Of a DNA stretch of 64,000 nucleotides, positions 28,801-49,789 are shown one piece after another. The stretch lies in contig NIVC01000867.1 in NCBI GenBank assembly GCA_002269645.1, positions 1 to 64,000 of the forward strand. The letters run 5' to 3'. Positions within the stretch are counted from its first letter, which is position 1. Every line of letters begins with the position of its first letter. Source of the DNA: Macrostomum lignano (Eukaryota). The position numbers and the translations under genes were made by a program. The notes beneath the pieces were generated by a model. The model worked only from the letters and a program-made list of their open reading frames with translations, searched no databases and was not told where the DNA came from.

Positions 28801-31800
28801 CAGGTTGAGTTTCCTAAGAAAAGTTTTCTTTAAAACATTATAAATATTTTCATTTTAAACAAACTTAATTATACTTAATTATTAATTTTTAATAATAATT
28901 TTACTAAATTAATTCATTTTTAATTTTAACGAAGCAAAACACTATTACTGACTTTCTTGAGTATACAAATTTTCCTTTATTTAAGGCCTATATAAAAACA
29001 TAAATTTACATTGAACTTTTCATGCTCAACATGAGTTTATTCACTGAAATTTGTAGGCCAACTGCCAAAAAATATATAAGTTTGTATACCAAAATTTATA
29101 TGCAAACTTTAAAACGAGTGATTTGCATACCCAAATTTTCTGGCATATATGTAACATGTAGCATAGGTCAGAGTCAGGAGTCTTAGAGTTCTAGACATAG
29201 AAATGTTTTATAAGCAAGTGTAAATAGCTAGGCCTATTGACATGTGGCCTATATTATTTACTTATTAGTCTATAAATCATAAGTTAATAATTCTTTATTA
29301 TAGGCCTATTACTAAAAATGTCTCATCTAAAAGCAAATTATAATATACAATTGTAAACTATAGACGTTATTCAATTACTTTGCTTAAATGCCTTAGCCCA
29401 AACAAATGTCTATTGATTATTAGGTATATATTATTATAATATTGAGTAGGCCCTAAACCTAATAAGACACACTAAATGTCTAAAGTAAGTTTAACTAGGG
29501 CCTGGCCTGGCCAAGGCCCTATATTTTTAGATTCAATGGCCAAAAGCCTAAAACTAGGTAGTATTAATTTCATATATATGAAAAACAAGATATAAGTTGT
29601 AGTTGTAGTTAAAACTTAAATGAAAAAACAAAGCCAACTGCTTTAAAAACAATCTTGAGAAAAATGTGTAGCAGAATAGGCTAGGCCTAGTAAAGTAAGA
29701 ATTGCAATAGGAGTAAGCCTAGGAGTATTGCAATTAGCAATAGTTAATAAGATAGTGGCTAGGCATTAAGCAGGTTTTTAATAACTTTTTGCAGAGGCTA
29801 GTGCCAGTGGAAAGACGCTATAAGCAAATATATGTTACAATATTTCAACAAAAAGGTTATAGAGAGGATCAGGGTAAAAAATAAATCGCTTTTTAAATAC
29901 TTTCGATATAAATTGGATGGCCAGCATTTTATTGTAGCATCAAAACAAAAACCGAATTATTGTAGTAATTTTTTGTATCATAAAAGTATATTCTGCACAT
30001 ACTGGCAATACATAAAAGCAAGAAAACACGTTTAGTACAGCACATGCGTTATGAATATGGCTGTATCGGAAACTAGGAAGAAAAATGAGTACAAATTCCG
30101 ATTGGAAGAAGAAGAGACGGTTTCCGACTAATTTCCGATTGCGCAAATATACCTCGAAAAAGATTTTCTTGAATTACTTGATACTTTTTATCATAGTAAC
30201 GTATTATATAAAACAAAATATAGTGGTTTAAACCTTTTCCGGCAAATTCCGACTACCGATTAAATTCCGTCCAGATTCCAATCGAATTCCGACTACCCTT
30301 TTTTACTGGGAGCCTGATGATTTCGTTCCACTTAGCCCGCTTGACTGGCTCTCCAATCACTGGCTGAAAGTCGATCTCACAAAAAGACTGCGTCAGCCAG
30401 TTGTTCCGGATGTTCTTCATCAAGTGTACTGGGTCGTACAGCAGGAACAGCGGCTGATCGGGATCAGCTGGATTCTTCGCCAACCAGGGAACAGCAGAAT
30501 CCCCTTGCAACAGTTGGAAGCAGTTGCGATTGGTGAAGTGGTTGTCACAAATTAGACTGACAACTGTGCCCCCTAGCTGATGTATTAGTTGGACGAGATG
30601 CACTACTTGGTCGTACAGGAAGGCTGGTTGCAAGCTGTAAATGGGTATCAGCCGTGCAACATAAGCGGGACTGCCCATGAACGACTTTACCATCAGCGCC
30701 AAAATAGTACGAGCAATTTGACGGGGAGCATCCTCTGAATACCCAATGGTATGACAGCCACTGAATCGTAGCGACGGCTTGACATACACTTCATCGAATA
30801 GAATGATGCAGTACCGCTGCAATGGGCTACAGTTTTCAAGATGTGACTGCACAATCGACTGGCAGTCACTGTCTGACCCAACACTGCCAAGACCACCAAT
30901 GTGCCGCTTGAGTGTAGATGGGTGAGGCAAACAGGTGTACTCTCTCAAAGTTTTATAAGCTCCTCTCCCGGCAAAATAGAACCTGGCTGCAGTCATGATG
31001 TCCTCAGAAGTGTATCGTCAAATACATAGTTCTTTGAAGTTATGGAATCCAAATGACAACACTTCTGCAATTGACTAAAACTACCCTTTTAATTGCAAAA
31101 ACAAAAGTAGGCTAGCTTATACTACTAGATAGGCCTACCCACCTTACTAGGCCTATATAGGCCCTATTTAATTTTATTTAAAAGTTTGAATCTCATTTTT
31201 ATCTGACAGAGTCACTCAGATTAACATGAACTATTTCCTAAAATGGCATACATAGCTAAGTTTACTTACAAATTTAAAGTTAAATAGTGGATTATGATTT
31301 ATAAATCATAAAAGACATTTACATTTAGAAAATTTCATGTGTTTATTCTATCTCTATACAGGGCTTAGACCTTAGGTTTAATAGCATAGGTGGTACACAG
31401 TAGACATGTATTTTGAATGCCTACAACAGCTGTATCAATGAATTTCAGTGGATGGAACCACTTATTAGGGAACTTGGTTGGAGTATGGATATATAAATAT
31501 AATTGAGTATGGGCCTATATTATGAATGAGTGTCCATTCTCAAACTTAGCATATTGTTATCATGTTTGTATGACATGAGATATGCTATGGCAATACAAAT
31601 TTAATTTTTTTATTAGAGAGATTTAATATAGAAGGCCTGATATGCTAGGCCAGGCTGGCTATAGTTTAGCTAGCCAAAGTGCACATATAGGCCCCCCCCC
31701 CTAGTCTATGTAATTTCATGACTACGTCAAAATGTGATAAAACTATATCTATAGAACGTTTTCGCGACTAAAACATAATAGAAACCAATAGAACAGGGTC

Positions 31801-33247
31801 TTAAAAGTAAAATGTTAGATGGGTTTTTTTGAAGCAGGCTTAAATCAATTACAACAAGCTTCTGAATATTAAAAACGTGAAAATTTGCTATCTCGCCAAT
31901 GTATTTTGCGGTGAAAATCGGACTTCAAAAAAATTTCCACGAAATCCGAGTGTAACGTCCTCTATCTACTAGTGGTCCTTGCGACATGTTTAGAGGTCAG
32001 CAAATGTGCACAAGTACTTTTTGTTGGCTGTGAGACGACTGTCACTCTTCTTGTTTTGCAGTCGTGTTCAAGAAATCCTACAAACGGTTACAGGTAACTA
32101 AACTGTGCTTTTACATTGTGCCAACGAATAACAAATTCATTAGTCGATGTTTTGTAGATGTAGCCATTTTTCAACGGCTTTTATACACTTAGACGTCGGA
32201 AAATAGATGCATGTATCATTATATAGTGCTTATGTAACACGGATGTAGTCACACAAGTGCACAAAGTGCTCCATTTTTTATTTACACGTATATCAACAAA
32301 TACCGCATTTTACGATTTACTATATGATTTGTCGAGATGAACCTCATTGCAAATAGTTTTTTTACGTTTGCTGGTATCAGTTAACTTCATATCAAATCAC
32401 CAGAGCCATCTTTTCGGAATCGGGGGCGTGAACGGTAAACCCGGAAGCAATAATCCGAGCAATAAAACAACTTCCTCTGGCATGAACCATGGCGGCTGCG
32501 GTGCCGGCTGGCTGGGGAAACCTGAGAACCCCAGGTAAGCATGAGTATACGGGCCTATATTGGCGTATCTTGGATCTTAAAGTACGTGCGCAAATACTGT
32601 GCAGCACATTCTGCGTCTGGAAATCGTGCCAATTTCACAGAAAGCAGGTTTGTTGCAGTGAAAAGCTCATATAAAATCGCATAAAAATATGGTTTTTACT
32701 TTTAGCTCCGAAACTAGAAATCCCCTATAAAGAAAGGAAGAAGAAAAGAAAGGAACTGCAGATGCTGTTATCTTTCGAAAAATAAGCCCTAAAAACTTGT
32801 AAATCAACCTTGGAAGACAAAATACAAATACATTTATGCTTTATTTTCTGTCGGAAAGTTCATTTTTTAGACAGTGCAACACTGAAATCCTTTCGTCACG
32901 TGACTATATGAGCATTATTACACCGTAGGTACAACAGCTACGACGGCGATCGAGGCGGTAGTCAAACCGACAGCTGGGCCGGAGGCAGCGCCGGTGGCAG
33001 CAGCATCGCCTGCGGCGGCTTCGGCGGTGGAGGAGGTGCTGGTACGGCCTCCAGCTCTTTCGTTGGCGCAGCCGGAGCTGGCGGCGGTTACAGCGGCGGC
33101 GGAGCCGGTATCTACGGCAACCATTGCGGAGGCGGCGGCGGCTCATTCTGCGGCGGCAGCGGCTGCACCGGCAGTGCTGGCGGCAACACGGCCAGCAAGC
33201 ACGGCTCCGTGCTGCTGAGTCTGGTGAATCTTGGCTCGTGTCCTTGA
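16805..33247 (+). CDS. Secreted PAN/apple + ALK/LTK-like glycine-rich protein (gene D, 410 aa, 6 exons, 13.9-kb intron 4)
   Basis: Exons 16805-16874, 17520-17852, 18040-18366, 18453-18505, 32404-32534, 32929-33247 total 1233 nt, in frame with matching phases. Signal MKITHIRIIIFCAFVCSCIGSMEG. Intron 2 needs a GC donor (17853). Joining across 18506-32403 is inferred from phase and from paralog structure. Confidence 0.75.
16940..17472. mobile_element. P-type MITE in intron 1 of gene D
   Basis: CAAGGATTATTCAATTAG ... TACTTAAGTAGTCCTTG termini. Interior resembles 3347-3953. Flanks ATAACGTC/GCGACGTC look like a decayed 8-bp TSD. Confidence 0.65.
19815..25083. mobile_element. Non-autonomous CMC/EnSpm-like element #1 (5.27 kb)
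   Basis: TIR CCCTAGATGACA / TGTCATCTAGGG with a 2-bp TSD AA. Many subterminal AGATCT motifs at both ends and an AT-rich interior. Confidence 0.8.
21076..21162 (+). repeat. 17-bp tandem repeat x5
   Basis: GCAGCTGGGCACCGAAG is repeated five times. Confidence 0.9.
25905..31065 (-). pseudogene. P-element (THAP9-like) transposase, disrupted
   Basis: Motifs LPHPSTL, ILFDEVYVK, LICDNHFTN, LYDPVHLMKNIRNNW, ERQKVSLVLDVF, YVLLG|ELQTDRLEG, YYISV, LYFISGYVA. Interrupted by 27147-30310. GT-AG intron at 26557-26689, a 1-bp frameshift near 26530 and an in-frame TGA near 31018. No THAP domain recognised. Confidence 0.88.
27147..30310. mobile_element. Non-autonomous CMC/EnSpm-like element #2 (3.16 kb) inserted in the P transposase
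   Basis: TIR CCCAGTAAAAAAGGG / CCCTTTTTTACTGGG with a 2-bp TSD AG and subterminal TCGGA/TCCGA repeats. Removing it restores EIIRL|EEASRN in frame. Confidence 0.88.
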
Positions 33248-34880
33248 GACCAAGGAGGCCTGTTGTCTAAAAGAATAGCTACTGAACTAAAATAATTTGA
33301 AGCAAAAGGTAGTCTGTGTGACGTTCGTTTAATAGGAACAAAAATCTTAAGAATTTTTAGAAATATTTAGCATACTTCTTTACCCAGTCAAAGCAATGCC
33401 GTTGCCTCGACGTCGCTAACACGTCGCAAAATAACGTCGCCAAACCAGCCATTTTGTCGCGCGCGGCGACGTCGCCATTACGACCCCAGGCGACGTCAGA
33501 ATTTCACGTACTGGCGACCAAACGACGACCATCTATTACAGATTGCTTAGCACCTTCAATATAGTGCGAATCTCGAAATCATAAGTTGAAAGATCATTAT
33601 AGATGAAATTAAACGAAGATTAATAAGCTACCTTGCTCTGGTTAAATATCTTGATTGAATTTATAAATTATTCAATATAATTCAATTCAAAATAGGTTTT
33701 TTGTTGGTTTATTTAGTTATTATTATCAGAAAAGTAATTTTTACACAGTTACACTTAAAGACAAATGTTTTTGAAGTGCAGATATTTTACTCACTAAGAA
33801 GGGTCAAAGGGACAATAAAAAACAGTGTCAAACGAAATTGCTCCAGATTTTCCAGTTAAACCTTACAACATGTTGGCAGCATAATTATTACTTAAATCGA
33901 ACCATTTCCTTCTCATCAAGTCCCCTCGATTCAGACTGCAGAGAACTAGGTCCTGGAGCCGGCGATGGAACTGCACTGCATGCACAGCTTGTGGACAAAG
34001 CAATTATGCTGCAATGAAATTTATCAGTACATTACATTAGTGACAATTGGACTACAATGCTGAACATTATCATTTTACAGCAGGAAAGAAATTAAGTTTC
34101 ATTTTTCTAACTTGAAATATCTGACTTTAAGCATTAAGCATACTCACTATTCTTAAAAGGAAATGGTGGGACACTGAAAGCAGCCAACTTCGCCATGGTC
34201 CTCCACATCATGACTCAGATGCATCAGGAAATACAGAAATGGAAGTTCCTGCACTTGTCCAGTTATTGTCTTGCTGATGTCCTGATGGACCTGCTCAATG
34301 CTCATGAATGTTCATCAGGCTTTGTGTTGACATAATCTCTTTGGTATTCTGCTGTAATTAGCTGCAATTGCCTTATCTCGTGCACATGATGGGAGCATGA
34401 CATTATTTAACTTCTTGGGCAAAGTATGCCATCTGCAATGCAAAATTTGATAAAAAATATATTATCTGTATATAAGAAACAAAAAATGAATATTTTTTTC
34501 AAGGAAATACATAGAATAAAAGCTTATAAAAATCAATTTTAAATAATCTATAGGTAGCTATTATTTTATATAAAGATTTATAGGCCTTTTTAGTTAGTTA
34601 CATTAATTTAATTATTAATTTATTAGATAATTAGATAATTATTAAAGATTAAAATAAGATTAGATATTTAATAATTTTATTAGATTTTATTAGAATTTTT
34701 TAATTTCTATCAATAAATTGAGGGATAAAAGGCAAAAAATAATAGGCTTACCTAAAAGCCAAGTTAGACATAGAAATTAGTTAAGTTTTCAAAGCATAAA
34801 TTATAAAGCAATTTAAAATAAATAGACAAAATAGGGCCTAATCAATGGCATGCTAATGGCAATCCCAATACATAGGCCTA

Positions 34881-37800
34881 GTCATTATAAAATTATAGGC
34901 CTAAAAAATGCAAAAAAAATCTATAAACTAACCTCTTAAATTCCTAATTAATAGTACACTAGACTAATTTTAGAAAATATGAATTTTGGCCAAAGATTAG
35001 ATTAAATAAAGTTAGGGCCTAACTATTAACATTAATATGTATCATGTATGTCATTATAAATATAAATAATTTTGTAAATCATATCTTATTAGATAGCCTA
35101 GGTCTAGTCAATAGTCTACATTATTAAATTAAGGCCTAACAATATAAAAGGCCAACTTAAGCTTATAAAATAAAGTCTCTATTATCCCCTTGCTTGTTTT
35201 CCCCTATTTAAAGTCCAATTTTTATTGCTTTTTTCCAACCCAGCTTTCTAATGTCATTGTAAGCAGAATGACATCATTTGCGTACATAGCATCATAGGTT
35301 ACTAAGGAACAGGCTCCACTTTATGAACTTGATTTGACAAGCCTTTTGGTTTGGCCAAAAACACAACACAATATTTATAGGTAGGTAGGCTGAGGCAAAA
35401 TTAGGTTTGCTTGTTAAGATACTAACTACTGAATTCACCGGCTGTTGGGTTCACCGGATTTTTAACTTTATTTTTAAGGGTTGGAAATATATATAATCGA
35501 TAGCGCAAGTAAAACTAGAGATGCGCCTAGATTTTTGGCTCTGCGCGTTGCCCCTGGACATCAGGAGGGCGATTTTTTTTATTTTTTGGGGGGTGAAACC
35601 GGCGGTGAACCCAATAAATCCTTCCAGAGAGCTGAAAACCTATCATGCAATATTTCAAAGCAAAATATAGGCAGATTTCGACGTGCGCATAAAATTTCAG
35701 CGTTGCGCGTTGCTCCTGAACTGCAGGAGAACGGTTTTTGTTAAATTCCGGTGGTGAATGACTGCCGCTGAACTCCGCGGTGAAGGAAATTAAGTGCGTT
35801 TCCTGAGTCGAAAAATAGTAAATTTTACTTCTACAAAAGCTATCAAAGTAAAATTTTATCACTTTTATTAGCATTTTTGCATTCCCTTTTGTGTTGATTC
35901 TTAAGCTATTTATTTTAATGCAAAGCGAAAAAAAGTTTTAAAAAAATTCGAACTACGAGTATTGAGTACTGCGTGCGCAGGCGGCGGCAGATGGCTAGCA
36001 CGTTGCAGGGCACTTGCTCACATCAAAGACAAAGCCAAAGTGTTGTGGTATTTTTGTGCACATACTTTTTAAAGCCTGTATTAATATAATATATTAAAGT
36101 AAAAACTTCTATTTCGATACATCTATTTGGTCAAATTATATAGACATACAATATTTAAGATTCTATAGTTTCCATTAAATTTTATAATTGAATTAAGGGA
36201 GGCACCTATAGGCTATAGTATATTTACTTTTATGCAAAATAGCAATTACCATGTAATAATATTGACCCTTCACTGGCCATGTCAATATAATTACTTATAA
36301 TTACCAATACTAGTCAATAAATATTTTTATATTTGATTTCATTGTAAATATGTTTCTATAATAATAATCCATCCATATATAATAAATTTTACTCTTAAAA
36401 TTCTTTTTCTTCTTTCTAACTGTAATTGCTAATTGAAAATTAGAATATACCAAGAATTAGTATGGCTCAGTTTTGTAAATTAAAAAAAATTCCGTGCTTT
36501 CTAATATTGTGCATTCTTTATTATAACACAAAATAATTTAAAATTGTAATTGCTAAATAGATAAGTAACATTTTGAAATTTGTATATATTAAAATTAGAG
36601 ACTAATTTCAGGGGCATAGCTAGGAATTTCCTATGGGAGGATACACCAAGGTGAAAGTGCTATGACAGAGTCACATGGTAGCATGTATAGCAACAAAGGG
36701 CAACAAAAAGTTTTTGTCAGGCTCTTTAGGGGGTATATGGTATAGGACCAAGACCGCCACACTTGAGGGAGCTAAGGGGGAGGAATTTGGCTTGTCATGT
36801 TATTAGATGGTACTGAGGAGGGGTAAGATGAGGAGAGCTAGCAGGACAAGGCCGCAAGAGAAGAACTGGTGAGCAGGCCAGGTGGGTGAGTGAGCCAGGC
36901 TCCTCATTTTTTGCATTCAATTTGAATTGTAAAGTAACAATGAGATATTGTTAAAATTGCCCTGGTTGACTTGCAATCATTTTGGGCCACTTATTTGTCT
37001 TATTAGTGACTAATCTTGGGATGTTTCCTCCTTATCTAACTCTACAACCCATCACAACCAATAGCAATGCTGGAAGATTGGTAGCTCCCCCTCAATTCCA
37101 GTAGCCAGTGAGAACTTATTTTGTCATTATAATATAGGAATGGCATAACTTATAAACTAGAATTACCAATGCAACAAAGGATCACTGAAGACTTATTGGT
37201 TGCCAATCTTGAATGCTCATTAGGAATTATATTTGTACCCAGAAACACAATACACACAATAAATTGTGTTTTTTGTGTTTACATCAGTCTAGCCTGCTAT
37301 TGAGCTATCTAGAAGCTGCACACTGATAGAATGCAATTTTTCTCAGGGATATTACTTATTTCTTAGTTACAGGGACCAATATGCTCATTAGGAATTATAT
37401 TTGTACCCAGAAACACAATACACACAATAAATTGTGTTTTTTTTGTGTTTACATCAGTCTAGCCTGCTATTGAGCTATCTAGAAGCTGCACTCTGAAAGA
37501 ATGCAATTTTTCTCAGGGATATTACTTCTTTCTTAGTTACAGGGACCAATATGCTCATTAGGAATTATATTTGTACCCAGCAACACAATACACACAATAA
37601 ATTGTGTTTTTTGTGTTTACATCAGTCTAGCCTGCTATTGAGCTATCTAGAAGCTGCACACTGAAAGAATGCAATTTTTCTCAGGGATATTACTTCTTTC
37701 TTAGTTACAGGGACCAATATGCTCATTAGGAATTATATTGTACCCAGAAACACAATACACACAATAAATTGTGTTTTTTGTGTTTACATCAGTCTAGCCT

Positions 37801-37950
37801 GCTATTGAGCTATCTAGAAGCTGCACACTGATAGAATGCAATTTTTCTCAGGGATATTACTTCTTTCTTAGTTACAGGGACCAATATGCTCATTAGGAAT
37901 TATATTTGTACCCAGAAACACAATACACACAATAAATTGTGTTTTTTGTG
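34881..37950 (+). repeat. Left arm of the near-perfect long inverted repeat
   Basis: Reverse complement of about 44900-47966. The ORF-track translations 35481/47104 and 35527/46974 are identical pairs. Confidence 0.92.
37214..37950 (+). repeat. 168-bp satellite, about 4.4 copies (left arm)
   Basis: Tandem unit TGCTCATTAGGAATTATATTTGTACCCAG...GGGACCAATA. Confidence 0.92.
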
Positions 37951-37994
37951 CTTTATAAATTGATTGGAAACTATTGAAAACTACTTAATTGCAG

Positions 37995-40030
37995 AGCGGT
38001 TGGTAGCGGAACTGATCGCCGAGCTGGTCGCGGCGCTGGTCGCGGCGCTGGTCGCGGCGCTGGTCGCGGCGCTGGTCGCGGCGCTAGTCGCGGCGCTGGT
38101 CGCGGCGCTGGTCGCGGCGCTGGTCGCGGCGCTGGTCGCGGCGCTGGTCGCGGCGCTGGTCGCGGCGCTGGTCGCGACGCTGGTCGCGGCGCTGGTCGCG
38201 ACGCTGGTCGCGGCGCTGGTCGCGGCGCTGGTCGCGGCGCTGGTCGCGGCGCTGGTCGCGGCGCTGGTCGCGGCGCTGGTCGCGGCGCTGGTCGCGGCGC
38301 TGGTCGCGGCGCTGGTCGCGGCGCTGGTCGCGGCTCTGATAGCGGCGCTAGTTGCGAAACTGCTACCGGCATTGATTGCGGCTCTGGTCGCGGCATTGAT
38401 CACCGAGCTGGTCGCGGCACTGATCACCAAACTGGTCGCGGCACTGATCACCAAACTGGTCGCGGCACTGATCACCGAGCTGGTCGCGGTTCTGATAGCG
38501 GCGCTAGTTGCGAAACTGCTACCAGCATTGATTGCGGCTCTGGTCGCGGCACTGATCGCCAAGCTGGTCGCGGCTCTGATCGCGGCACTGATCGCCAAGC
38601 TGGTCGCGGCACTGATCGCCAAGCTGGTCGCGGCACTGATCATCGAGCTGGTCGCGGCACTGATCACCAAGCTGGTCGCGGCACTGATCACCGAGCTGGT
38701 CGCGGCGCTGATCGCCAAGCTGGTCGCGGCACTGATCACCAAGCTGGTCGCGGCACTGATCACCGAGCTGGTCGCGGCACTGATCATCGAGCTGGTCGCG
38801 GCACTGATCACCAAGCTGGTCGCGACACTGATCACCGAGCTGGTCGCGGCGCTGGTCGCCAAGCTGGTCGCGGCGCTGGTAGCGGCGCTGGTCGCAGCGC
38901 AAACATTAGCATTAAACGTTGCTCCAAAACCGACGCTGATCGTGTCGACACTGCTAGAAATTCAAGTACCTCTAAGAGTGGGTCAGTTTTGACTCCAACC
39001 CGAAATGCATTTAATGATGATTCTATCCAGGCATCTAGCAGCGCCGTGGAAAATAAGCGTCGGTCAAATTGCACAGCTCCAAAGTATTTTCCAGTCGGTA
39101 AATATTTTAGAAGTAGTCGACCTGATGAAGAGCTTATTCGGAAACACCTACCAGGTGTACTGCTGGTAAACACGATTGTTGTGAAAGGTTACAGGGATTG
39201 GCCAGGACGTAATGAGCCCATTGATGTTTATCTAAATGGTATGTGTGCTGTATATCACGTCGTTATGGCAGTTGTTTTATTTCTGCGTCAGAATAATGCC
39301 GTAAGGGAGATGTTTAGGCTTCAATTCGGTGGCATTAGAATCGGCACATGCATTATCCGATTGGTCGATGCTGCATCATTGCCAGAAGCTGAGACTGTTT
39401 TGCTCGATGCCATTTTAGGCTCTAACTACAGACTGCAATTTTTAAACAAGTGTGTCTTCATGGACTCGCATTCTGTACATGTTGACCACTCTCAAGGTGA
39501 TGAACGTGAAGTAATCGAGCTAATGCTCTCGCCTATTCTCCAAAGCACTTTGCGAATGGCAGAGTGCTCCAACGGACACCGACACGAATTCGACTCGTTC
39601 AGATACGCGAAAGAATCACTGACGTTTCAAACAGAAGTCGAGAAGCGCACAATTGCAGACGTTATAGAGGCAGAATTTGTAAGACCGGAAGTTAAATTGT
39701 GCCCCTCCATCACTGAGCAGGGCACAGCGTGTCAAGAAGTTATGACAGTCGCTCCAAGACGGCCTTTTCCGTTGATTCTAATTTGGCCAGCGGTGGTTGG
39801 CACCGTAGATCACCTTCAACCTGAAGTCCATGCCGGCGAAGTGCAATTCGTTCTGGCGGGAATAACGTATTATGCAAACGACCACTATCAACTACGACTA
39901 CCGTTCAAGCATCACAACCAAGAAGTACCTGGTAGTCTACGACGACCGCATCAATGACAAAAATTGCCTTGGTCGAATTCCTGCAGGCGCAATTCCACAT
40001 AGCGCTGTTTATTTTTCTAGCGCCACGTAA
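37995..40030 (+). CDS. (GRGA)n/(GRGTDHQA)n-repeat protein with a C-terminal USP-like (papain-fold) cysteine protease domain; 5' exon unknown
   Basis: Frame 1 is open 37978-39957 and runs from the repeat into the 38989 ORF; TTGCAG acceptor at 37994. Motifs NGMCAV (Cys 39244), ECSNGH / LCP..C, FPLILI and FVLAGITYYANDHY. After a +1 shift near 39886: KYLVVYDDRIND..AVYF* (stop 40028-40030). The family call comes from motif recall, not from a search. Confidence 0.6.
38030..38900 (+). repeat. 12-bp (GGTCGCGGCGCT)n array grading into 24-bp units
   Basis: About 26 copies of the 12-mer (38030-38340), then GGTCGCGGCACTGATCACCAAGCT-type 24-mers and a duplicated longer block. Confidence 0.95.
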
Positions 40031-42517
40031 AACTTTAGCTTGTACTCGTATTAGCGCTATTTTGATATTTAGTCCGGTTTACACATTCTTGGGCATAACC
40101 TTGAATTTGGACACGGAGTTTAAAAAAATCAGGAGCAGTTTTAATTGATTTACAAGTCTAGTAAAAAAGTACCGTTTCTTAGTTGTCAGGTTATGTTATG
40201 CTCTCAGATTATTTTAATATGCTCGAGGAGTTGTCAATTGACAATTAGTGCGTATTATTATTGTTAGTCTTGATCTTATCCTTTTATTTCCTTTAGCTCT
40301 CACAGTGGGCTTTAAACCCAAGCCTGTCTTGCGGCTTCATTTAATTATCTATATTAGAGTCAAGTCATATCACACATGCAGTGCGCTGTGCTCTTTTTTA
40401 CCTTTGGACTAATTGCTCATGTTGGATCATGTTTTGAAAACTTTCTTGACGCGTTGTCTTGCCTAACACACAGAAGTACATGTACATACGTACGAGCACT
40501 ACCTACCTACCGTAATACAATTCCCATAGCTACATGCAAAAGTCTTAGTGTTAGGCAAGTACGAGCCTTTTGAATTTATTTTGCAACCGCAGTTTGTTTG
40601 CGTTGCTAACTGCCTTTCTATATCCTATCAGACGCCAAATTAGTCAATCTTTTTTCTCGCCGTTATCCTTTGCAAGTAGTTCGCTTTTTCTTTTCTTTTA
40701 ATTTTGAGACTTTTGTACTGTTCAGAAGCTTGAGTTTTACAGATGTACGTGTAAATTGAAAGGGTAATTATCACCACGTTTTTAGTATATAAGACAGACA
40801 AATCTTAGACATTTAGTATAGTTTGATATTTTCAACTTTTGTATATTAGAAGAAGATTGTGACTAGCCATCCGAGCCCTAAAAAAACAAATTGAAAAAAA
40901 ATGAATGAGTACCTTTAAGTTTTGCATCCACTATGAAAGGCAGCTATTTAGCCAGCAGAATATATTAATCAGATCCCTATGATCCCTACTTTGGCTCAAA
41001 CGTCTGAGCAACCTAAATTAGCCACAGAAGTTAGTAACTCCCTCTAGGATGGTTAAAACAATTTTTTATATATCCAGATATACGTCGTACTCTTATATTC
41101 AGTTGCCAATATCGAGGGCTCAGACTTTGTTTTTTTAAAATATACGTAAAATACAAGCGTATCTTCGACAATTTTTAATGTTCGTTTTAATTACATGCCT
41201 AAAATTTCTTGTCTCCATTTTCTTTTCTTAGGACAAAGCCCTCAACAAAAGCAAAAATTAGTGGCTAAATTTGAGAAGTAAATTAGATTGCAAAGCGGAC
41301 CGAAAGCAATGCAGTTCCCAGTCAATTACACACTACAAATCAACTACCGAATTCAGGCAGCGAGCGCCGAGTAGCTAGAATGAGTTGTGGCGGAAAAGTT
41401 CATATTTAAAGCCTAAATGTTTTTCATTAAATTAAGAGAGAGCCAATTCACTTTGGCTTGAAGGCTTTATTTGGCCGTCTTTTTGATCTTGTAGAGAGCC
41501 AGAGATTCTATCTAGATGCCCCCCATTGGGGGGCGAAAATTGCTAGTTTCTCTTCTAAATAAATAATGTCAAATTAGCCAGCAACCCAGAGGTCTGTTTT
41601 CGCATTCTCTCAACAAGAGAAAATCAATTGGGTCGTAACAATTCAATTACATGAGTTATCATAGCTCATTGATTTTGATTTATGAGTTATTATTATACTG
41701 TTTTATCAGTCTTCTCGCGCGGCAATACGAGCGTTGTTCTGCCAGTTGAATCGACACACTCAGTTCCAGAACCGTTTTTATGCATTTACTACTGTAGAAT
41801 TCAGTAATAAAAAGTAGATTATTAATAGTCGCTTTGCAAAATGTTGAAACATAACAAAATTGGAGAGCAACCCACCATGAAAATAATAATTGTGTTCATA
41901 CATGTACATATTTATTACATTTGTCTACGTATACATTATCAACGGCAAAAAACTATCAGATTGAAAACAGTAACGCTTATCCATTACACAAAAATACAGA
42001 TAAAACAGCCAGCCAGGGATAAAACAAACAGAAGATTAAATATACAGATACGGATAGATGAGTAATAGATCAGGATGACAAAATTTATCGCACATATAAC
42101 TTTGTTTATAATTAAGCCAGAAACACATGTAGGCAACACTGCTACATGTATTGCTGGCATGAGAGAGCCATTTTTCGTGTATAGATAGCTACTAGGCCTC
42201 ACGAGTGGGTCACGGCTGCATAAAATCCGTAAAAATACTTCAACTTACTGATTTTCTGTAAACTTTTCGGAACAAAATCCATCTAAGCTTAAGATGCTTT
42301 GGTGCATAAAGAATCAAATATTCAAATATTAAAAGGTCCTGCTAATATTTCTGGTCCGGTGATTACAAGCAGACGAGAAAGCAATGAGATATAAATTAGT
42401 CTTGAATAATGGAATTTAAATAAAGAAAATTATAAAGCAAAAATCAACTTGCACAACTCATAAACTCAAGTATTCGAATTCAGTTCAGTTAAAAAGAAGC
42501 GTTAGCTAGTCCGAAAA

Positions 42518-42812
42518 TCATTTTTTCTCTATTAATTTACATTCAGTTCTGCGGAGTTTCGTATTATTGGAACTTCTCAGAACTATGGCACTTTTTTCAC
42601 GGAATTTATTAGAATTTTCTCCTCGTCGTCTTTTTATCGGAGCTATTTCAATATCAGTCTCGGCCTCCCTTCGAGCAGTCTCCTCGGCCTGCCTTCGAAC
42701 CGTCTCCTCAGCTTCCATTCTACTTGACTCCTCTTCGATTGAAGCATCAGAAAAAACTTCATCATCCACGATATCCAGATCATTTTCAGATCGACACATC
42801 GAAGTAATATGC
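42518..42812 (-). CDS. Acidic, NLS-bearing exon/ORF of unknown function in the core of element #3
   Basis: TTTTCTCAG acceptor at 42813, then HITSMCRSENDLDIVDDEVFSDASIEEESSRMEAEETVRRQAEETARREAETDIEIAPIKRRR. Possible donor GAAT|GTAAAT near 42540. Confidence 0.4.
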
Positions 42813-45637
42813 CTGAGAAAAATTGCATTCTATCAGTGTGCAGCTTCTAGATAGCTCAATAGCAGGCTAGACTGATGTAAACACAAAAAACACAATCTAT
42901 TGTGTGTATTGTGTTTCTGGGTACAAATATAATTCCTAATGAGCATATTGGTCCCTGTAACTAAGAAAGAAGTAATATCCCTGAGAAAAATTGCATTCTA
43001 TCAGTGTGCAGCTTCTAGATAGCTCAATAGCAAAATAGACTGATGTAAACACAAAAAACACAATTTATTGTGTGTATTGTGTTTCTGGGTACAAATATAA
43101 TTCCTAATGAGCATATTGGTCCCTGTAACTAAGAAAGAAGTAATATCCCTGAGAAAAATTGCATTCTATCAGTGTGCAGCTTCTAGATAGCTCAATAGCA
43201 AAATAGACTGACGTAAACACAAAAAACACAATTTATTGTGTGTATTGTGTTTCTGGGTACAAATATAATTCCTAATGAGCATATTGGTCCCTGTAACTAA
43301 GAAAGAAGTAATATCCCTAAGAAAAATTGCATTCTTTCAGTGTGCAGCTTCTAGATAGCTCAATAGCAGGCTAGACAGATGTAAACACAAAAAACACAAT
43401 TTATTGTGTGTATTGTGTTTATGGGTACAAATATAATTCCTAATGAGCATATTGGTCCCTGTAACTAAGAAAGAAGTAATATCCCTGAGAAAAATTGCAT
43501 TCTTTCAGTGTGCAGCTTCTAGATAGCTCAATAGCAGGCTAGACTGATGTAAACACAAAAAAACACAATTTATTGTGTGTATTGTGTTGCTGGGTACAAA
43601 TATAATTCCTAATGAGCATATTGGTCCCTGTAACTAAGAAAGAAGTAATATCCCTGAGAAAAATTGCATTCTATCAGTGTGCAGCTTCTAGATAGCTCAA
43701 TAGCAAAATAGACTGATGTAAACACAAAAAACACAATTTATTGTGTGTATTGTGTTTCTGGGTACAAATATAATTCCTAATGAGCATATTGGTCCCTGTA
43801 ACTATGAAAGAAGTAATATCCCTGAGAAAAATTGCATTCTTTCAGTGTGCAGCTTCTAGATAGCTCAATAGCAGGCTAGACTGATGTAAACACAAAAAAC
43901 ACAATTTATTGTGTGTATTGTGTTGCTGGGTACAAATATAATTCCTAATGAGCATATTGGTCCCTGTAACTAAGAAAGAAGTAATATCCCTGAGAAAAAT
44001 TGCATTCTATCAGTGTGCAGCTTCTAGATAGCTCAATAGCAGGCTAGACTGATGTAAACACAAAAAACACAATTTATTGTGTGTATTGTGTTTCTGGGTA
44101 CAAATATAATTCCTAATGAGCATATTGGTCCCTGTAACTAAGAAAGAAGTAATATCCCTGAGAAAAATTGCATTCTATCAGTGTGCAGCTTCTAGATAGC
44201 TCAATAGCAAAATAGACTGATGTAAACACAAAAAACACAATTTATTGTGTGTATTGTGTTTCTGGGTACAAATATAATTCCTAATGAGCATATTGGTCCC
44301 TGTAACTAAGAAAGAAGTAATATCCCTAAGAAAAATTGCATTCTATCAGTGTGCAGCTTCTAGATAGCTCAATAGCAAAATAGACTAATGTAAACACAAA
44401 AACACAATTTATTGTGTGTATTGTGTTTCTGGGTACAAATATAATTCCTAATGAGCATATTGGTCCCTGTAACTAAGAAAGAAGTAATATCCCTGAGAAA
44501 AATTGCATTCTTTCAGTGTGCAGCTTCTAGATAGCTCAATAGCAGGCTAGACTGATGTAAACACAAAAAACACAATTTATTGTGTGTATTGTGTTTCTGG
44601 GTACAAATATAATTCCTAATGAGCATATTGGTCCCTGTAACTAAGAAAGAAGTAATATCCCTGAGAAAAATTGCATTCTTTCAGTGTGCAGCTTCTAGAT
44701 AGCTCAATAGCAGGCTAGACTGATGTAAATACAAAAAACACAATTTATTGTGTGTATTGTGTTGCTGGGTACAAATATAATTCCTAATGAGCATATTGGT
44801 CCCTGTAACTAAGAAAGAAGTAATATCCCTAAGAAAAATTGCATTCTATCAGTGTGCAGCTTCTAAATAGCTCAATAGCAGGCTAGACTGATGTAAACAC
44901 AAAAAAACACAATTTATTGTGTGTATTGTGTTGCTGGGTACAAATATAATTCCTAATGAGCATATTGGTCCCTGTAACTAAGAAAGAAGTAATATCCCTG
45001 AGAAAAATTGCATTCTATCAGTGTGCAGCTTCTAGATAGCTCAATAGCAGACTAGACTGATGTAAACACAAAAAACACAATTTATTGTGTGTATTGTGTT
45101 TCTGGGTACAAATATAATTCCTAATGAGCATATTGGTCCCTGTAACCAAGAAAGAAGTAATATCCCTGAGAAAAATTGCATTCTATCAGTGTGCAGCTTC
45201 TAGATAGCTCAATAGCAGGCTAGACTGATGTAAACACAAAAAACACAATTTATTGTGTGTATTGTGTTTCTGGGTACAAATATAATTCCTAATGAGCATA
45301 TTGGTCCCTGTAACTAAGAAAGAAGTAATATCCCTGAGAAAAATTGCATTCTTTCAGTGTGCAGCTTCTAGATAGCTCAATAGCAGGCTAGACTGATGTA
45401 AACACAAAAAACACAATTTATTGTGTGTATTGTGTTTCTGGGTACAAATATAATTCCTAATGAGCATATTGGTCCCTGTAACTAAGAAATAAGTAATATC
45501 CCTGAGAAAAATTGCATTCTATCAGTGTGCAGCTTCTAGATAGCTCAATAGCAAAATAGACTGATGTAAACACAAAAAACACAATTTATTGTGTGTATTG
45601 TGTTTCTGGGTACAAATATAATTCCTAATGAGCATTC
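42801..45637 (-). repeat. 168-bp satellite, about 17 copies (right arm)
   Basis: Period of 168 (GCATTC at 42825, 42993, 43161, ...). Reverse complement of 37214-37950. Confidence 0.95.
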
Positions 45638-47966
45638 AAGATTGGCAACCAATAAGTCTTCAGTGATCCTTTGTTGCATTGGTAATTCTAGTTTATAAGT
45701 TATGCCATTCCTATATTATAATGACAAAATAAGTTCTCACTGGCTACTGGAATTGAGGGGGAGCTACCAATCTTCCAGCATTGCTATTGGTTGTGATGGG
45801 TTGTAGAGTTAGATAAGGAGGAAACATCCCAAGATTAGTCACTAATAAGACAAATAAGTGGCCCAAAATGATTGCAAGTCAACCAGGGCAATTTTAACAA
45901 TATCTCATTGTTACTTTACAATTCAAATTGAATGCAAAAAATGAGGAGCCTGGCTCACTCACCCACCTGGCCTGCTCACCAGTTCTTCTCTTGCGGCCTT
46001 GTCCTGCTAGCTCTCCTCATCTTACCCCTCCTCAGTACCATCTAATAACATGACAAGCCAAATTCCTCCCCCTTAGCTCCCTCAAGTGTGGCGGTCTTGG
46101 TCCTATACCATATACCCCCTAAAGAGCCTGACAAAAACTTTTTGTTGCCCTTTGTTGCTATACATGCTACCATGTGACTCTGTCATAGCACTTTCACCTT
46201 GGTGTATCCTCCCATAGGAAATTCCTAGCTATGCCCCTGAAATTAGTCTCTAATTTTAATATATACAAATTTCAAAATGTTACTTATCTATTTAGCAATT
46301 ACAATTTTAAATTATTTTGTGTTATAATAAAGAATGCACAATATTAGAAAGCACGGAATTTTTTTTAATTTACAAAACTGAGCCATACTAATTCTTGGTA
46401 TATTCTAATTTTCAATTAGCAATTACAGTTAGAAAGAAGAAAAAGAATTTTAAGAGTAAAATTTATTATATATGGATGGATTATTATTATAGAAACATAT
46501 TTACAATGAAATCAAATATAAAAATATTTATTGACTAGTATTGGTAATTATAAGTAATTATATTGACATGGCCAGTGAAGGGTCAATATTATTACATGGT
46601 AATTGCTATTTTGCATAAAAGTAAATATACTATAGCCTATAGGTGCCTCCCTTAATTCAATTATAAAATTTAATGGAAACTATAGAATCTTAAATATTGT
46701 ATGTCTATATAATTTGACCAAATAGATGTATCGAAATAGAAGTTTTTACTTTAATATATTATATTAATACAGGCTTTAAAAAGTATGTGCACAAAAATAC
46801 CACAACACTTTGGCTTTGTCTTTGATGTGAGCAAGTGCCCTGCAACGTGCTAGCCATCTGCCGCCGCCTGCGCACGCAGTACTCAATACTCGTAGTTCGA
46901 ATTTTTTTAAAACTTTTTTTCGCTTTGCATTAAAATAAATAGCTTAAGAATCAACACAAAAGGGAATGCAAAAATGCTAATAAAAGTGATAAAATTTTAC
47001 TTTGATAGCTTTTGTAGAAGTAAAATTTACTATTTTTCGACTCAGGAAACGCACTTAATTTCCTTCACCGCGGAGTTCAGCGGCAGTCATTCACCACCGG
47101 AATTTAACAAAAACCGTTCTCCTGCAGTTCAGGAGCAACGCGCAACGCTGAAATTTTATGCGCACGTCGAAATCTGCCTATATTTTGCTTTGAAATATTG
47201 CATGATAGGTTTTCAGCTCTCTGGAAGGATTTATTGGGTTCACCGCCGGTTTCACCCCCCAAAAAATAAAAAAAATCGCCCTCCTGATGTCCAGGGGCAA
47301 CGCGCAGAGCCAAAAATCTAGGCGCATCTCTAGTTTTACTTGCGCTATCGATTATATATATTTCCAACCCTTAAAAATAAAGTTAAAAATCCGGTGAACC
47401 CAACAGCCGGTGAATTCAGTAGTTAGTATCTTAACAAGCAAACCTAATTTTGCCTCAGCCTACCTACCTATAAATATTGTGTTGTGTTTTTGGCCAAACC
47501 AAAAGGCTTGTCAAATCAAGTTCATAAAGTGGAGCCTGTTCCTTAGTAACCTATGATGCTATGTACGCAAATGATGTCATTCTGCTTACAATGACATTAG
47601 AAAGCTGGGTTGGAAAAAAGCAATAAAAATTGGACTTTAAATAGGGGAAAACAAGCAAGGGGATAATAGAGACTTTATTTTATAAGCTTAAGTTGGCCTT
47701 TTATATTGTTAGGCCTTAATTTAATAATGTAGACTATTGACTAGACCTAGGCTATCTAATAAGATATGATTTACAAAATTATTTATATTTATAATGACAT
47801 ACATGATACATATTAATGTTAATAGTTAGGCCCTAACTTTATTTAATCTAATCTTTGGCCAAAATTCATATTTTCTAAAATTAGTCTAGTGTACTATTAA
47901 TTAGGAATTTAAGAGGTTAGTTTATAGAATTTTTTTGCATTTTTAGGCCTATAATTTTATAATGAC
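42801..47966 (-). repeat. Right arm of the long inverted repeat
   Basis: Mirror of 34881-37950, longer only because it has more satellite units. Confidence 0.92.
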
Positions 47967-49789
47967 TTAAAATGATTTTAAAATGATAAATTTGAATAAT
48001 CGTTAGGCCTAAAGACAGTTGACCACAGACCTCTATCATCTTATAAATATAAGGTCATACAATATTATACCACACAATGTACAGAGATCAAATGCAGAAT
48101 TAATTATTTAGCTATTTCTGTCACTATTAATCGGTATAAATTTAAGTTTATTGTCAAAAGAAACAGTTCGTATTTTGCTACTTCGATCAAGAAAATTTTA
48201 CTATCCATCGTATAACAAACGAGCAAATAACCTTCGTGTAGAAATAAAGGATAGTTCAGCTCAACTAGTTTAAAAATTCATAAAAAAGTTATTCCGAATT
48301 AAGTAAGGATATAAGATCTTCTATAGCATATCAAATAATTTTTGAAAAAAAGCCTACGTCGCAAGATGACGTCGCCCCGACTAAAACAGTGCAACCAATA
48401 TTTGCCCGCGACGATGGCGACCAATGGCGACTTCATAGCGACGTCGAGGCGACGTACTGCCTTGCTTGGGTACAGCATACCGTATTAGTGCAATGTTTAA
48501 TTCTCGTCTAAAGTCGAATTTTTAAGATTTTTAAGATCATTTTTAAGACAAAGAGTTCTCCGCAAAAATGTATCCTGAGTTTTAGGATGTACGAGCGTAC
48601 TACGGGTGTTTTTATGACAATACTCCAGTGTGCACTTGTTCTGAACGGTTTTGAGCAATAGGAAACGAACTTTAAAGAGCTAATATGGCATCAGAACTAT
48701 AATAGTGAACAATAGTTTTAATTGTTCGCATGCAAAGTGGTACTTTCAAATTTTGTTAGCCCACGTATTAGTGAAGTGCTTGCGTGTTCACTTGAATGCT
48801 GATTTCGAGTGTAATATCCGTCCGCAAAGTCTCTATTATACAGTCACGGTCCTATGCAGACAGTGTGTATCGCTAGAAAATGGATTCACGGGTAAATCAT
48901 TCAAGCAGGATATAACAATTCTATTGCATTATTTTTCAGCACGGAGCATTGATTGTTCAGAAACTTTTTTTGACCGTGGGAACATTTCTCTTGTCAGCAA
49001 TAGTTCAAGCTCAGTCGGGTACAAGTTCACTTGACTCTAATAAAAACAGAGTCTACTCGTGCATACAGTTGGTCTGGGAAGCTGCAAGTGCCATACATGG
49101 CTTGATTGCTATCAAAGCAGCAATTTCACTTTGTTGACTGAATGGCTACAGCTGGATCTGCATACGTTGCAAGGCTCTTGAGAGTTTCAAGGGTCGCCTT
49201 TCTCAACTCCTAAACTTATTTCAGAGTAGGAAACAGTTAATAGCAAAAGAGAATAGCCTTAAAAATGAAAATAATACGCAATTTTGTGAAAGCGATTGTC
49301 TAATTAAACAGAAAACGTGTGTCATCCAAAATTATTCAACGCAAGGACTACTAAAGTAGAAAGACACGTCTCGAAATCTATGGAAATATTTTGAAGCTTT
49401 GAAGGATAACAAAATTATTGCTTTGGATAGGATGCAGACCCAATGTTCACCTGTCCTTTTGATATGATGTGCCTCTCTTATATAACTCTATTGATATCTT
49501 ATGAAACTAAGTTCAAGTAGTCTCTGATTGATATTCAAACTGAATTATTTCACTAAATTTGCTTAAATTACTACTATTAGTAGAAATGCATCTTTACAGT
49601 AGCCATATTTTTCCTTTGGAAAAATTCACTAGCTCAACTGGTGAAAAAAATCTTGTAATGTAAATATTTTATTCCTTTTGCTCAATTTTGCTCTAAGCAA
49701 AAACATACCTGAATTTAGTGAAGCGGTTGGAATCGATAACTTGTTAGACAAATCGATTGGGAACACAACAACAGAATACGCGTTCAGCG

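What the first reader, a model, noticed from the sequence alone, without database searches (positions are those of the whole stretch)
37995..40030. Transposon-borne USP-like cysteine protease fused to a (GRGA)n repeat domain, hidden from the ORF track
Seen: the frame continuous with the 38989 ORF reads GRGAGRGA.../GRGTDHQA... for about 300 aa with no stop and no ATG, starting at a TTGCAG acceptor. The C-terminal half has, in USP order, a Cys box (LNGMCAVYHVVMAV), E-rich helix (GDEREVIE), zinc-finger-like pairs (ECSNGH, LCP...C), PLILI, a His box (FVLAGITYYANDHY) and, after a +1 shift (CACTAT[AT]CAAC, a 2-bp deletion), VYDD and a terminal YF. Known: USP/C19 enzymes use Cys...His...Asp boxes, and some DNA transposons carry Ulp1/OTU proteases. 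Inference: a divergent deubiquitinase/deSUMOylase with an RG-rich nucleic-acid-binding or methylation-target tail, possibly used by the element against host silencing.
Basis: partly seen in the sequence, partly recalled or inferred. Interest (0 to 1): 0.8.

Follow-up and report, generated by a model that had tools for sequence, protein, structure and literature searches.

The report
Dead orphan gene in foldback transposon
This stretch is a broken copy of a flatworm-only gene of unknown function carried inside a 12-kb foldback-type DNA transposon of Macrostomum lignano, and the proposed ubiquitin-protease identity could be neither confirmed nor excluded.

Summary
The sequence features are real. 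An RG-rich frame with no stop and no ATG (37995-38988) runs into the 38989 ORF, and a frameshift separates the last 33 codons. The DNA is Macrostomum lignano.

The gene sits in a 12,007-bp foldback-like transposon (35421-47427) with kb-long inverted arms holding 168-bp arrays. A second copy at another locus (L001) has the same termini and a 9-bp target-site duplication.

ORF1 is a real coding gene: against a 50%-identical relative, codon positions 1/2/3 are 66/77/38% identical. It has no relatives outside this lineage among 5.8 billion proteins.

The window copy is dead. It has lost the ATG, and its 12-bp minisatellite has expanded, so the '(GRGA)n domain' is copy-specific. It also carries 7 extra bases (39925-39931) that break the frame.

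The USP claim is unproven. Pfam, PDB, hhalign and AlphaFold2/Foldseek give nothing. Only targeted tests are marginal: a QQD-box-like match (p about 0.004) and a collinear motif chain (p about 0.02). The putative His and Asp are absent from the diverged relative, itself a pseudogene.

Verdict: a new foldback-type element carrying orphan ORFs, with a USP-like fold a roughly 25-30% possibility.

The parts
34880..35420 (.). Outer 541-bp extension of the inverted repeat (left). It is not part of the element as defined by the second copy, and there is no TSD at its edge.
   Evidence: Window self-BLAST: 34880-37955 is the reverse complement of 47967-44894 at 99.5%. Flanks read.
35421..37212 (+). Left terminal inverted repeat, non-repetitive part. 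The terminus is ACTAACTACTGAATTCACCGG, with TTCACCGG twice in the first 37 bp.
   Evidence: Matches L001 6724-8504 at 98.2%. The terminal 21-mer occurs only at 35421 and 47427, and the TTCACCGG sites are. This arm is identical to the right arm, 0/1773 differences.
37213..37955 (+). Left subterminal array of 168-bp tandem repeats, 4.4 copies.
   Evidence: TRF period 168, 97% matches; copy numbers.
37956..37994 (+). Short unique linker ending in TTGCAG. It is the last sequence shared with L001 (9806-9846) before the copies diverge. It may be a (trans-)splice acceptor; this was not tested.
   Evidence: The linker is not part of the inverted repeat.
37995..38900 (+). Minisatellite (12-bp unit GCTGGTCGCGGC, then 24/48-bp units) that reads GRGA / GRGTD[HR][QR]A in the ORF1 frame. 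It is expanded about 4-fold relative to L001 and replaces L001's 5' UTR and ATG.
   Evidence: The 331 codons from 37996 to 38988 (repeat plus linker) are 30% Gly, 19% Arg and 16% Ala, and there is no ATG.
38901..39924 (+). ORF1 C-terminal domain in frame 1, with candidate Cys (39244-46), a QGDERE helix, a conserved C-x3-H...C-x9-C set, PLILIW, and candidate His (39883-85).
   Evidence: Coding signature against L002. Only 6 substitutions in 1123 bp against L001.
39925..39931 (+). 7 bp (GTACCTG, between two GTA triplets) present here and absent from the intact copy. This shifts the frame and leads to the stop at 39955-57.
   Evidence: DNA alignment of the window against L001.
39932..40030 (+). 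Last 32 codons of ORF1, now in the +1 frame (VVYDDRINDK...AVYFSSAT, stop at 40028-30).
42518..42799 (-). Remnant (3' third) of ORF2, a 444-aa (AEETARRQ)n-repeat ORF that is intact in L001. Here it is fused directly to the right array.
42801..45635 (-). Right subterminal array of 168-bp repeats, 16.9 copies.
45655..47427 (-). Right terminal inverted repeat, non-repetitive part.
47428..47967 (.). Outer 541-bp extension of the inverted repeat (right).

Best explanation
The region is the first of two inward-facing ORFs carried by a 12-kb foldback-like class II transposon of the flatworm Macrostomum lignano (window 35421-47427).

Shown: the element has kb-long terminal inverted repeats. Each is 1.8 kb of unique sequence plus a variable 168-bp tandem array. 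A second copy at an unrelated locus has identical termini and a 9-bp target-site duplication. Neither copy encodes a recognisable transposase.

Inferred: the element moves by cut-and-paste with a transposase supplied in trans, probably of the Mutator/Foldback type given the 9-bp duplication. Its two arms are kept identical by intra-element gene conversion.

Shown: ORF1 is a genuine protein-coding gene restricted to this lineage. It has an RG-rich low-complexity N-terminus encoded by a minisatellite, followed by a domain of about 290 aa with a conserved Cys/His set (C-x3-H...C-x7-9-C). The window copy is a pseudogene. The ATG and 5' UTR have been replaced by an expanded minisatellite, a 7-bp difference breaks the frame 32 codons before the end, and ORF2 is truncated.

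Inferred, at low confidence: the intact protein is an element-encoded accessory factor. My best single guess for its chemistry is a very divergent USP-type thiol protease (about 25-30%). The next guess is a zinc-binding nucleic-acid or protein-binding factor with no catalytic role.
For: Organism and family: the only relatives among 5.8 billion and 1.84 billion proteins are M. lignano PAA51778.1 (P0001, 95%), the window's own gene call (P0004), and one 72-aa fragment from a Logan assembly.

Element: same-ended copies with different flanks; 9-bp TSD GTGTGCATG at L001; long inverted repeats and arrays; terminal 21-mer unique to the two ends. The arms differ at 0/1773 and 1/1781 positions within a copy, against 1.2% between copies.

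Coding: against L002, codon-position identity is 66/77/38%, with pN 0.28 against pS 0.79. ORF1 diverges 0.53% between the copies against 1.55% for non-coding DNA, Fisher p=0.008. The GenBank annotation of L001 derives from RNA-seq transcript assemblies (PMC5730564).

Pseudogene state: no in-frame ATG before 39241; the 7-bp indel; ORF2 truncation.

USP hint: the HMM and hhalign both pick the QQD-box region. It was reached by 4/1000, 7/3000 and 12/3000 shuffles. The 12-block collinear chain scores z=2.2 and places the QQD, His-box and Asp-box blocks at the predicted sites.
Against: Only two copies could be examined, and only one shows a TSD. In the window copy the inverted repeat runs 541 bp past the termini with no TSD. 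No transposase was linked to the element, so the superfamily rests on the TSD length and the arm architecture alone. Between the two M. lignano copies 4 of 6 ORF1 changes are non-synonymous, so recent constraint is not shown.

Confidence: 0.7

Rival explanations
1. One reading: the C-terminal domain is a bona fide but extremely divergent USP/C19-type (or USPL1/C98-like) deubiquitinase or deSUMOylase. It would have a Cys-His-Asp triad and a finger-type zinc ribbon, fused to an RG-rich tail and carried by the transposon.
For: The motif order and spacing resemble USPs: Cys box 84 aa before a Q-x-D-x-x-E helix, two Cys/His pairs 45 aa apart, P-L-I-L-I strand, HY, and 17 aa on to YDD. The USP HMMs (4 and 81 sequences) and hhalign independently choose the QQD-box region. 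The collinear chain test gives z=2.2-2.3, p about 0.02. The low-confidence AF2 models are alpha-rich in the first half and beta-rich in the second, and a predicted helix starts at or around the candidate Cys. C195, H199, C240 and C250 (C-terminal numbering) are invariant in L002.
Confidence: 0.27
2. The domain is a non-catalytic zinc-binding module, and the protein is an element-encoded nucleic-acid or chromatin-binding accessory factor with an RG-rich disordered arm. The protease-like motifs are coincidental.
For: The best-conserved residues between L001 and L002 are the C-x3-H...C-x7-9-C set and MTVAPRRPxPLxLIWP, not the putative triad. His and Asp are absent in L002. The N-terminus is RG-rich. 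Every protease profile search was negative.
Against: There is no hit to any zinc-finger or nucleic-acid-binding family either. L002 is itself a pseudogene with a stop and frameshifts, so the loss of His and Asp there may be decay. The RG tract varies in length from copy to copy and may be unimportant.
Confidence: 0.3
3. Both M. lignano copies descend from an already frameshifted gene. In this scenario a 2-bp loss at 39886 (CACTAT[AT]CAAC) came first, and L001 later lost 7 bp, for a net loss of 9 bp that restored the frame. The true ancestral protein would then read HY-INYDYRSSITTKKYLVVYDD.
For: The 7 bp lie between two GTA triplets, which is the signature of a microhomology-mediated deletion in L001 rather than an insertion in the window. 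The +1 frame is open across the whole interval.
Against: This needs two events where one suffices. The sequence at 39886 is identical in both copies. With the 81-sequence blocks the two frames score the same (z=2.29 against 2.23). Neither frame gives an HMM signal. The L002 outgroup does not discriminate, scoring 29 against 28.
Confidence: 0.2

Closest known systems
Foldback-type DNA transposons: Drosophila FB, and the Tm1 Mutator/Foldback family of root-knot nematodes (PMC3169594)
   Same: Long composite terminal inverted repeats that contain tandem repeats and vary in length between arms and copies. 9-bp target-site duplication (Tm1: most commonly 9 bp; FB: 9 bp, from my own knowledge). Many copies lack a transposase. 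Some copies lack TSDs.
   Different: The outer 1.8 kb of each arm is non-repetitive, and the repeats (168 bp) are subterminal. In FB and Tm1 short repeats make up most of the arm. No Mutator/Phantom-type transposase was found in either copy. The cargo is two orphan ORFs that contain repeats. The host is a flatworm.
Galileo, a P-superfamily transposon with foldback-like arms (PMC3573991, PMC4168063)
   Same: Kb-scale, internally repetitive inverted repeats with marked structural dynamism. A P/THAP9-like transposase fragment does lie in the same window (30253-30996).
   Different: Galileo makes 7-bp duplications (from my own knowledge), against 9 bp here. The P-like ORFs lie outside the element, and the element's terminal 21-mer occurs nowhere else in the window.
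USP / peptidase C19 deubiquitinases (Pfam PF00443, PF13423)
   Same: Order and approximate spacing of a Cys-containing motif, a Q-x-D-x-x-E helix, two Cys/His pairs, a P-hydrophobic strand, HY, and (Y)DD near the C-terminus. There is a marginal QQD-box match.
   Different: No profile or pairwise similarity at any accepted threshold. The Cys box lacks the G-N-x-C-[YF]-x-N-S consensus. His and Asp are not conserved in the only diverged relative. The fold is unknown.
Cysteine proteases carried by DNA transposons: Ulp1/C48 in MULEs and Ginger2, OTU in Helitrons/Helentrons, adenain-like in Polintons (from my own knowledge)
   Same: The concept of an accessory papain-clan protease encoded by a class II element.
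   Different: Those proteases are readily recognised by Pfam profiles. They have a His-Asp-Cys (C48) or compact Cys-His (OTU) layout, and they usually accompany a transposase. None of this holds here.
RG/RGG (GAR-type) low-complexity regions
   Same: The composition (30% Gly, 19% Arg over codons 37996-38988) and the repeated G-R-G.
   Different: The tract is encoded by a hypervariable minisatellite. The pure (GRGA)n run exists only in the dead window copy, while the intact copy has about six GRGTD[HR][QR]A units. There is no evidence of methylation or RNA binding.

Membership tests
USP / peptidase C19 (Pfam UCH PF00443, UCH_1 PF13423) | Significant match to the family profile | tested here: not met
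   Pfam hmmscan of the repaired protein and of 6 fragments at E<=10 gave no UCH hit. The positive controls USP2/7/8/14 scored 1e-64 to 1e-83. hhalign against the 4- and 81-sequence USP alignments gave probability 0.1%.
USP / peptidase C19 | Cys box (G-N-x-C-[YF]-x-N-[SA]-x-[LI]-Q) with the catalytic Cys at a helix N-terminus | tested here: inconclusive
   L-N-G-M-C-A-V-N/Y-H is present, but no profile aligns it. It scores 7.2 on the 4-USP block and is not chosen with the 81-sequence blocks. In the first AF2 model a helix starts right after the Cys, and in the second a helix spans it. Both models have pLDDT about 31.
USP / peptidase C19 | QQD box (Q-Q-D-x-x-E-F-hydrophobic helix) | tested here: inconclusive
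   SQGDEREVIELMLSPIL is the only region aligned by hmmsearch --max and hhalign. It scores 1.7-2.4 bits and was reached by 4/1000, 7/3000 and 12/3000 shuffles. It is conserved in L002 as NDGEESEIIQLMLLPIL.
USP / peptidase C19 | His box (G-H-Y) and Asp/Asn box (W-x-x-F-[DN]-D), conserved among family members | tested here: inconclusive
   NDHY and VYDD are present in both M. lignano copies. There is no HMM signal for the C-terminal 90-110 aa in either frame (452 and 547 of 3000 shuffles score as high). L002 has N-F and T-Q at the aligned positions, but it is a pseudogene.
USP / peptidase C19 | Papain-like thumb-palm-fingers fold | tested here: inconclusive
   AlphaFold2 gave mean pLDDT 31.1 (single sequence) and 31.4 (3-row alignment). 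Foldseek against the PDB had a best E of 1.4 with TM about 0.1; a USP1 chain at rank 5 (E=3.7, TM 0.11) is meaningless.
USP / peptidase C19 | Ubiquitin or ubiquitin-like isopeptidase activity | not testable with these tools
   This needs recombinant protein and Ub/SUMO-AMC or activity-probe assays.
Foldback-like (Mutator/Foldback) class II transposons | Long terminal inverted repeats that contain tandem repeats and vary in length | tested here: met
   The arms are 2.5 kb and 4.6 kb in the window and 3.1 kb each in L001. The 168-bp arrays have 4.4, 16.9, 7.6 and 7.6 copies.
Foldback-like (Mutator/Foldback) class II transposons | 9-bp target-site duplication | tested here: met
   L001 has GTGTGCATG on both sides of the ACTAAC...GTTAGT termini; the chance of this is about 4e-6. 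It is not seen at the window copy, where the inverted repeat extends 541 bp further.
Foldback-like (Mutator/Foldback) class II transposons | Dispersed copies with identical ends in unrelated flanks | tested here: met
   The window and L001 share only 35421-47427 and 6724-18360 respectively; the flanks are unrelated. Only two copies were available.
Foldback-like (Mutator/Foldback) class II transposons | Mutator/Phantom-type DDE transposase in autonomous members | not tested
   Neither copy has a transposase ORF. The M. lignano genome could not be searched for an autonomous partner with these tools.
P superfamily (Galileo-like) | 7-8-bp TSD and a THAP/P-type transposase within the element | tested here: not met
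   The TSD is 9 bp. The TNP-like RNase H ORF at 30253-30996 lies outside the element, and the element's terminal sequence does not flank it.

The most novel reading that the evidence does not exclude
The intact family member (PAA51778.1) would be a functional, extremely divergent USP-class thiol protease with an RG-rich arm, encoded as cargo of a Mutator/Foldback-type DNA transposon. To my knowledge that would be the first USP-fold enzyme domesticated by a class II element, in contrast to the known Ulp1 and OTU cases. It might act on ubiquitin-like marks during transposition or host silencing.
Probability: 0.2. Interest if true: 0.6.

Novelty: new member of a known kind. Interest (0 to 1): 0.3.

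Why it matters
The USP reading, if confirmed, would add a third class of ubiquitin-like protease to those carried by DNA transposons. It would also give a handle on how a flatworm transposon interacts with host ubiquitin or SUMO pathways.

As things stand, the value is mainly for annotation. This is a previously undescribed foldback-type element in a regeneration model organism. Its arms are kept identical within each copy, its arrays and coding minisatellites expand freely, and it carries two lineage-restricted ORFs. The copy in this window is non-functional.

Tried and rejected
1. Chance ORF in GC-rich DNA. Rejected: there is a strong codon-position signature against L002.

2. SL trans-splicing supplying the start codon. 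M. lignano's spliced leader ends in ATG (from my own knowledge). Joined at 37995 it would read ATG AGC GGT TGG TAG, a stop, so it cannot start the RG frame (read).

3. The TTGCAG linker belonging to the inverted repeat and serving both inward ORFs. Rejected: the right arm ends before it.

4. Ulp1/C48 identity rejected on motif order (the Cys precedes the His). OTU rejected for lack of any profile hit and a 213-aa Cys-His distance.

5. The nearby P-like transposase as the element's own gene. Rejected: it is outside the termini and the TSD length is wrong.

6. The two copies as whole-genome-duplication homeologues. Rejected: the flanks are unrelated.

7. The third homologous-protein search (USP profile) returned only mammalian USP2 orthologues and added no diversity. 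Diversity came instead from 77 giant-virus USP loci.

8. hhalign -glob and free-end global pairwise alignments degenerate and are uninformative.

9. Searches for Mlig016243 and SRR24204725 in the paper library found nothing, so the organism behind L002 is unknown.

10. Pfam and PDB on ORF2 gave only low-complexity matches.
Full report
**What is in the sequence**

Frame 1 of the + strand is open from the stop at 37975-37977 to 39957. From 37995 to about 38900 it reads GRGAGRGA..., then GRGTD[HR][QR]A units. It then runs into the 322-codon ORF that the ORF list starts at 38989. The first ATG codon in this frame is at 39241.

The quoted motifs are all there. They are LNGMCAVYH (Cys codon 39244-46), GDEREVIE, ECSNGH, KLCPSITEQGTAC, PLILIW and FVLAGITYYANDHY (His codon 39883-85). 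In the +1 frame come VVYDDRINDK...AVYFSSAT and a stop at 40028-30.

The RG tract is a minisatellite. Tandem Repeats Finder gives period 24 and 37.5 copies over 38001-38900, and there are 36 exact copies of GCTGGTCGCGGC. Three of its six frames contain no stop. An open frame there therefore says nothing by itself.

**Whose DNA it is and how many relatives exist**

Among 5.8 billion proteins the repaired C-terminal domain has one relative. That is Macrostomum lignano hypothetical protein BOX15_Mlig016243g2 (PAA51778.1, P0001, 440 aa, 95% identity). Its cluster mate P0004 is the window's own gene call: 546 aa, no Met, ending PGSLRRPHQ.

An exhaustive HMMER scan of 1.84 billion representatives added only a 72-aa fragment (P0002, 54%) and a spurious repeat protein. 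A profile search added nothing. Pfam and the PDB sequence library give no hit at E<=10. This is a lineage-restricted orphan family.

**The second copy and the element**

P0001 is encoded on NIVC01003360.1 (locus L001). BLAST of L001 against the window shows that the two share one block only: L001 6724-18360 and window 35421-47427. The flanks are unrelated.

Both blocks begin ACTAACTACTGAATTCACCGG and end with its reverse complement. In L001 the block is flanked by a perfect 9-bp direct repeat, GTGTGCATG.

Each end is a long inverted repeat. It has about 1.78 kb of non-repetitive sequence followed by an array of 168-bp units. The arrays have 4.4 and 16.9 copies in the window and 7.6 and 7.6 in L001.

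This is the architecture of foldback-type class II elements. The 9-bp duplication matches Drosophila FB (my own knowledge) and the nematode Tm1 Mutator/Foldback family (PMC3169594). No transposase is encoded in either copy. The P/THAP9-like fragments at 25905-26468 and 30253-30996 lie outside the element.

Two observations are unusual:
- The two arms of a copy are identical (0/1773 and 1/1781 differences), although the copies differ by 1.2%. This implies arm-to-arm homogenisation.
- In the window the inverted repeat continues 541 bp beyond the termini, with no duplication at either boundary. I read this, as inference, as a conversion tract that ran past the end of the element.

**ORF1 is a real gene, but this copy is dead**

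L002 is a 1.5-kb Logan contig from an unidentified sample, and it carries a 50%-identical relative. Over 171 aligned codons the nucleotide identity is 66%, 77% and 38% at positions 1, 2 and 3. That gives pN 0.28 against pS 0.79, which is a clear protein-coding signature.

Between the two M. lignano copies, ORF1 outside the repeat has 6 substitutions in 1123 bp and one indel. The surrounding non-coding DNA has 1.2-2.1% substitutions and 6-8 indels per stretch (Fisher p=0.008 for substitutions). However, 4 of the 6 changes are non-synonymous.

The GenBank annotation of the L001 assembly was derived from RNA-seq-based transcript assemblies cut at trans-splice sites (PMC5730564). The L001 gene is therefore presumably transcribed.

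In L001 the ORF starts at an ATG 155 nt after a TTGCAG, has only about 70 aa of GRGTD[HR][QR]A repeats, and reads through to ...AVYFSSAT. The window copy differs in three ways:
- **Start lost.** The 158 bp that hold the 5' UTR and ATG are replaced by an expanded array that abuts TTGCAG directly.
- **Frame broken.** There are 7 extra bases (GTACCTG, 39925-39931) relative to L001. They shift the frame and give the stop at 39955-57.
- **ORF2 truncated.** The second ORF of the element is 444 aa with (AEETARRQ)n in L001. Here it is cut down to its last 93 codons and fused to the right array.

A spliced-leader ATG joined at 37995 would read ATG AGC GGT TGG TAG and stop. The long (GRGA)n 'domain' is thus a copy-specific minisatellite expansion in a pseudogene.

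**Where the frameshift is**

The two copies are identical there, and the only indel is the 7 bp at 39925-39931.

The simplest reading is one event. But the 7 bp sit between two GTA triplets, which looks like a microhomology deletion in L001. A loss of 2 bp followed by a loss of 7 bp would be a compensated frameshift.

The outgroup is too diverged to decide, scoring 29 against 28.

**Is it a USP-like protease?**

I then validated them. Each hits PF00443 end to end at 1e-64 to 1e-83, and the USP2 text is 98-99% identical to database USP2. I added 77 diverse giant-virus USP domains retrieved with a pattern scan.

Results:
- **hhalign** against the 4- and 81-sequence alignments gave probability 0.1%.
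- **Semi-global pairwise alignment** gave Z between -1.6 and 0.8. USPs score 12-17 against each other.
- **hmmsearch --max** gave 2.4 bits (4-sequence HMM) and 1.7 bits (81-sequence HMM). These were reached by 4/1000, 7/3000 and 12/3000 shuffles. The alignment always covers only VDHSQGDEREVIELMLSPIL against the QQD box.
- **The His/Asp region alone** gives no signal in either frame.
With 12 blocks from 81 USPs it gave z=2.2 and 2.3, with 113/5000 and 95/5000 shuffles scoring as high. It does not place the Cys box.
- **AlphaFold2 failed** twice, with mean pLDDT 31.1 and 31.4. Foldseek on the model returns nothing below E=1.4.
- **In L002** the Q-x-D-x-x-E helix, the C-x3-H...C-x7-9-C set and MTVAPRRPxPLxLIWP are conserved. 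The positions of the putative His and Asp read N-F and T-Q. L002 is itself a pseudogene with a stop and frameshifts, and it does not cover the Cys box.

Overall the resemblance is collinear and suggestive, but statistically marginal. It was also scored with tests aimed at the very motifs that prompted the idea. I put a true USP-type fold at about 25-30%.

**Verdict**

The frameshift is elsewhere, and the repeat 'domain' is a minisatellite artefact of a dead copy. The protease identity is unproven and the anti-silencing function is speculation.

What is actually here is a degenerate copy of a new foldback-type DNA transposon of M. lignano. It carries two orphan, repeat-containing ORFs.

Noticed in passing
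window 35421-37193 vs 45655-47427; L001 6724-8504 vs 16580-18360: The two inverted arms of each copy are identical (0/1773 and 1/1781 differences), while the two copies differ by 1.2%. The terminal repeats of a single element are therefore evolving in concert.
   Followed up: partly
window 34880-35420 and 47428-47967: The inverted repeat runs 541 bp beyond the element termini in the window copy only, with no target-site duplication at either boundary. It may be a conversion tract that ran into the flank.
   Followed up: partly
L001 13684-15018 (-); window 42518-42799 (-): The element has a second ORF, 444 aa with a long (AEETARRQ)n repeat and no Pfam family. It converges on ORF1 and is truncated to 93 codons in the window.
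   Followed up: partly
window 25905-26468 (-) and 30253-30996 (-): ORFs that look like pieces of a P-element/THAP9-like transposase. The 30253-30996 ORF hits PF21787 (TNP-like RNase H N-terminal domain) at 8.6e-10. The 25905-26468 ORF has no Pfam hit and is called by eye only. They lie 4-9 kb upstream of the foldback element and outside it.
   Followed up: partly
window 23393-23785: An isolated fragment 80% identical to part of the element's arm (36747-37116), probably a relic of a related repeat.
   Followed up: no
window 2019-2665: A tandem repeat of about 51 bp that encodes a proline-rich peptide (PNPPPPPPPKPQSLEPV) in one frame and is open in several frames.
   Followed up: no
window 8289-8834 and 54076-54603: Two related Gly/Ala/Ser-rich ORF pairs, open on both strands, at opposite ends of the window. 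They may be members of a repeated gene or element family.
   Followed up: no
window 61886-62785 (+): A 299-aa ORF with a weak retrotransposon Gag match (PF03732, E=0.014), probably part of an LTR retrotransposon that runs off the window.
   Followed up: no
window 4322-4658 and 32924-33261: A 338-bp direct repeat at 98.5% identity, 28.6 kb apart.
   Followed up: no
L002 (Logan SRR24204725 contig, 1535 bp): The only diverged relative of ORF1 is itself a pseudogene with one in-frame stop and two frameshifts. It comes from a sample whose organism could not be identified.
   Followed up: partly
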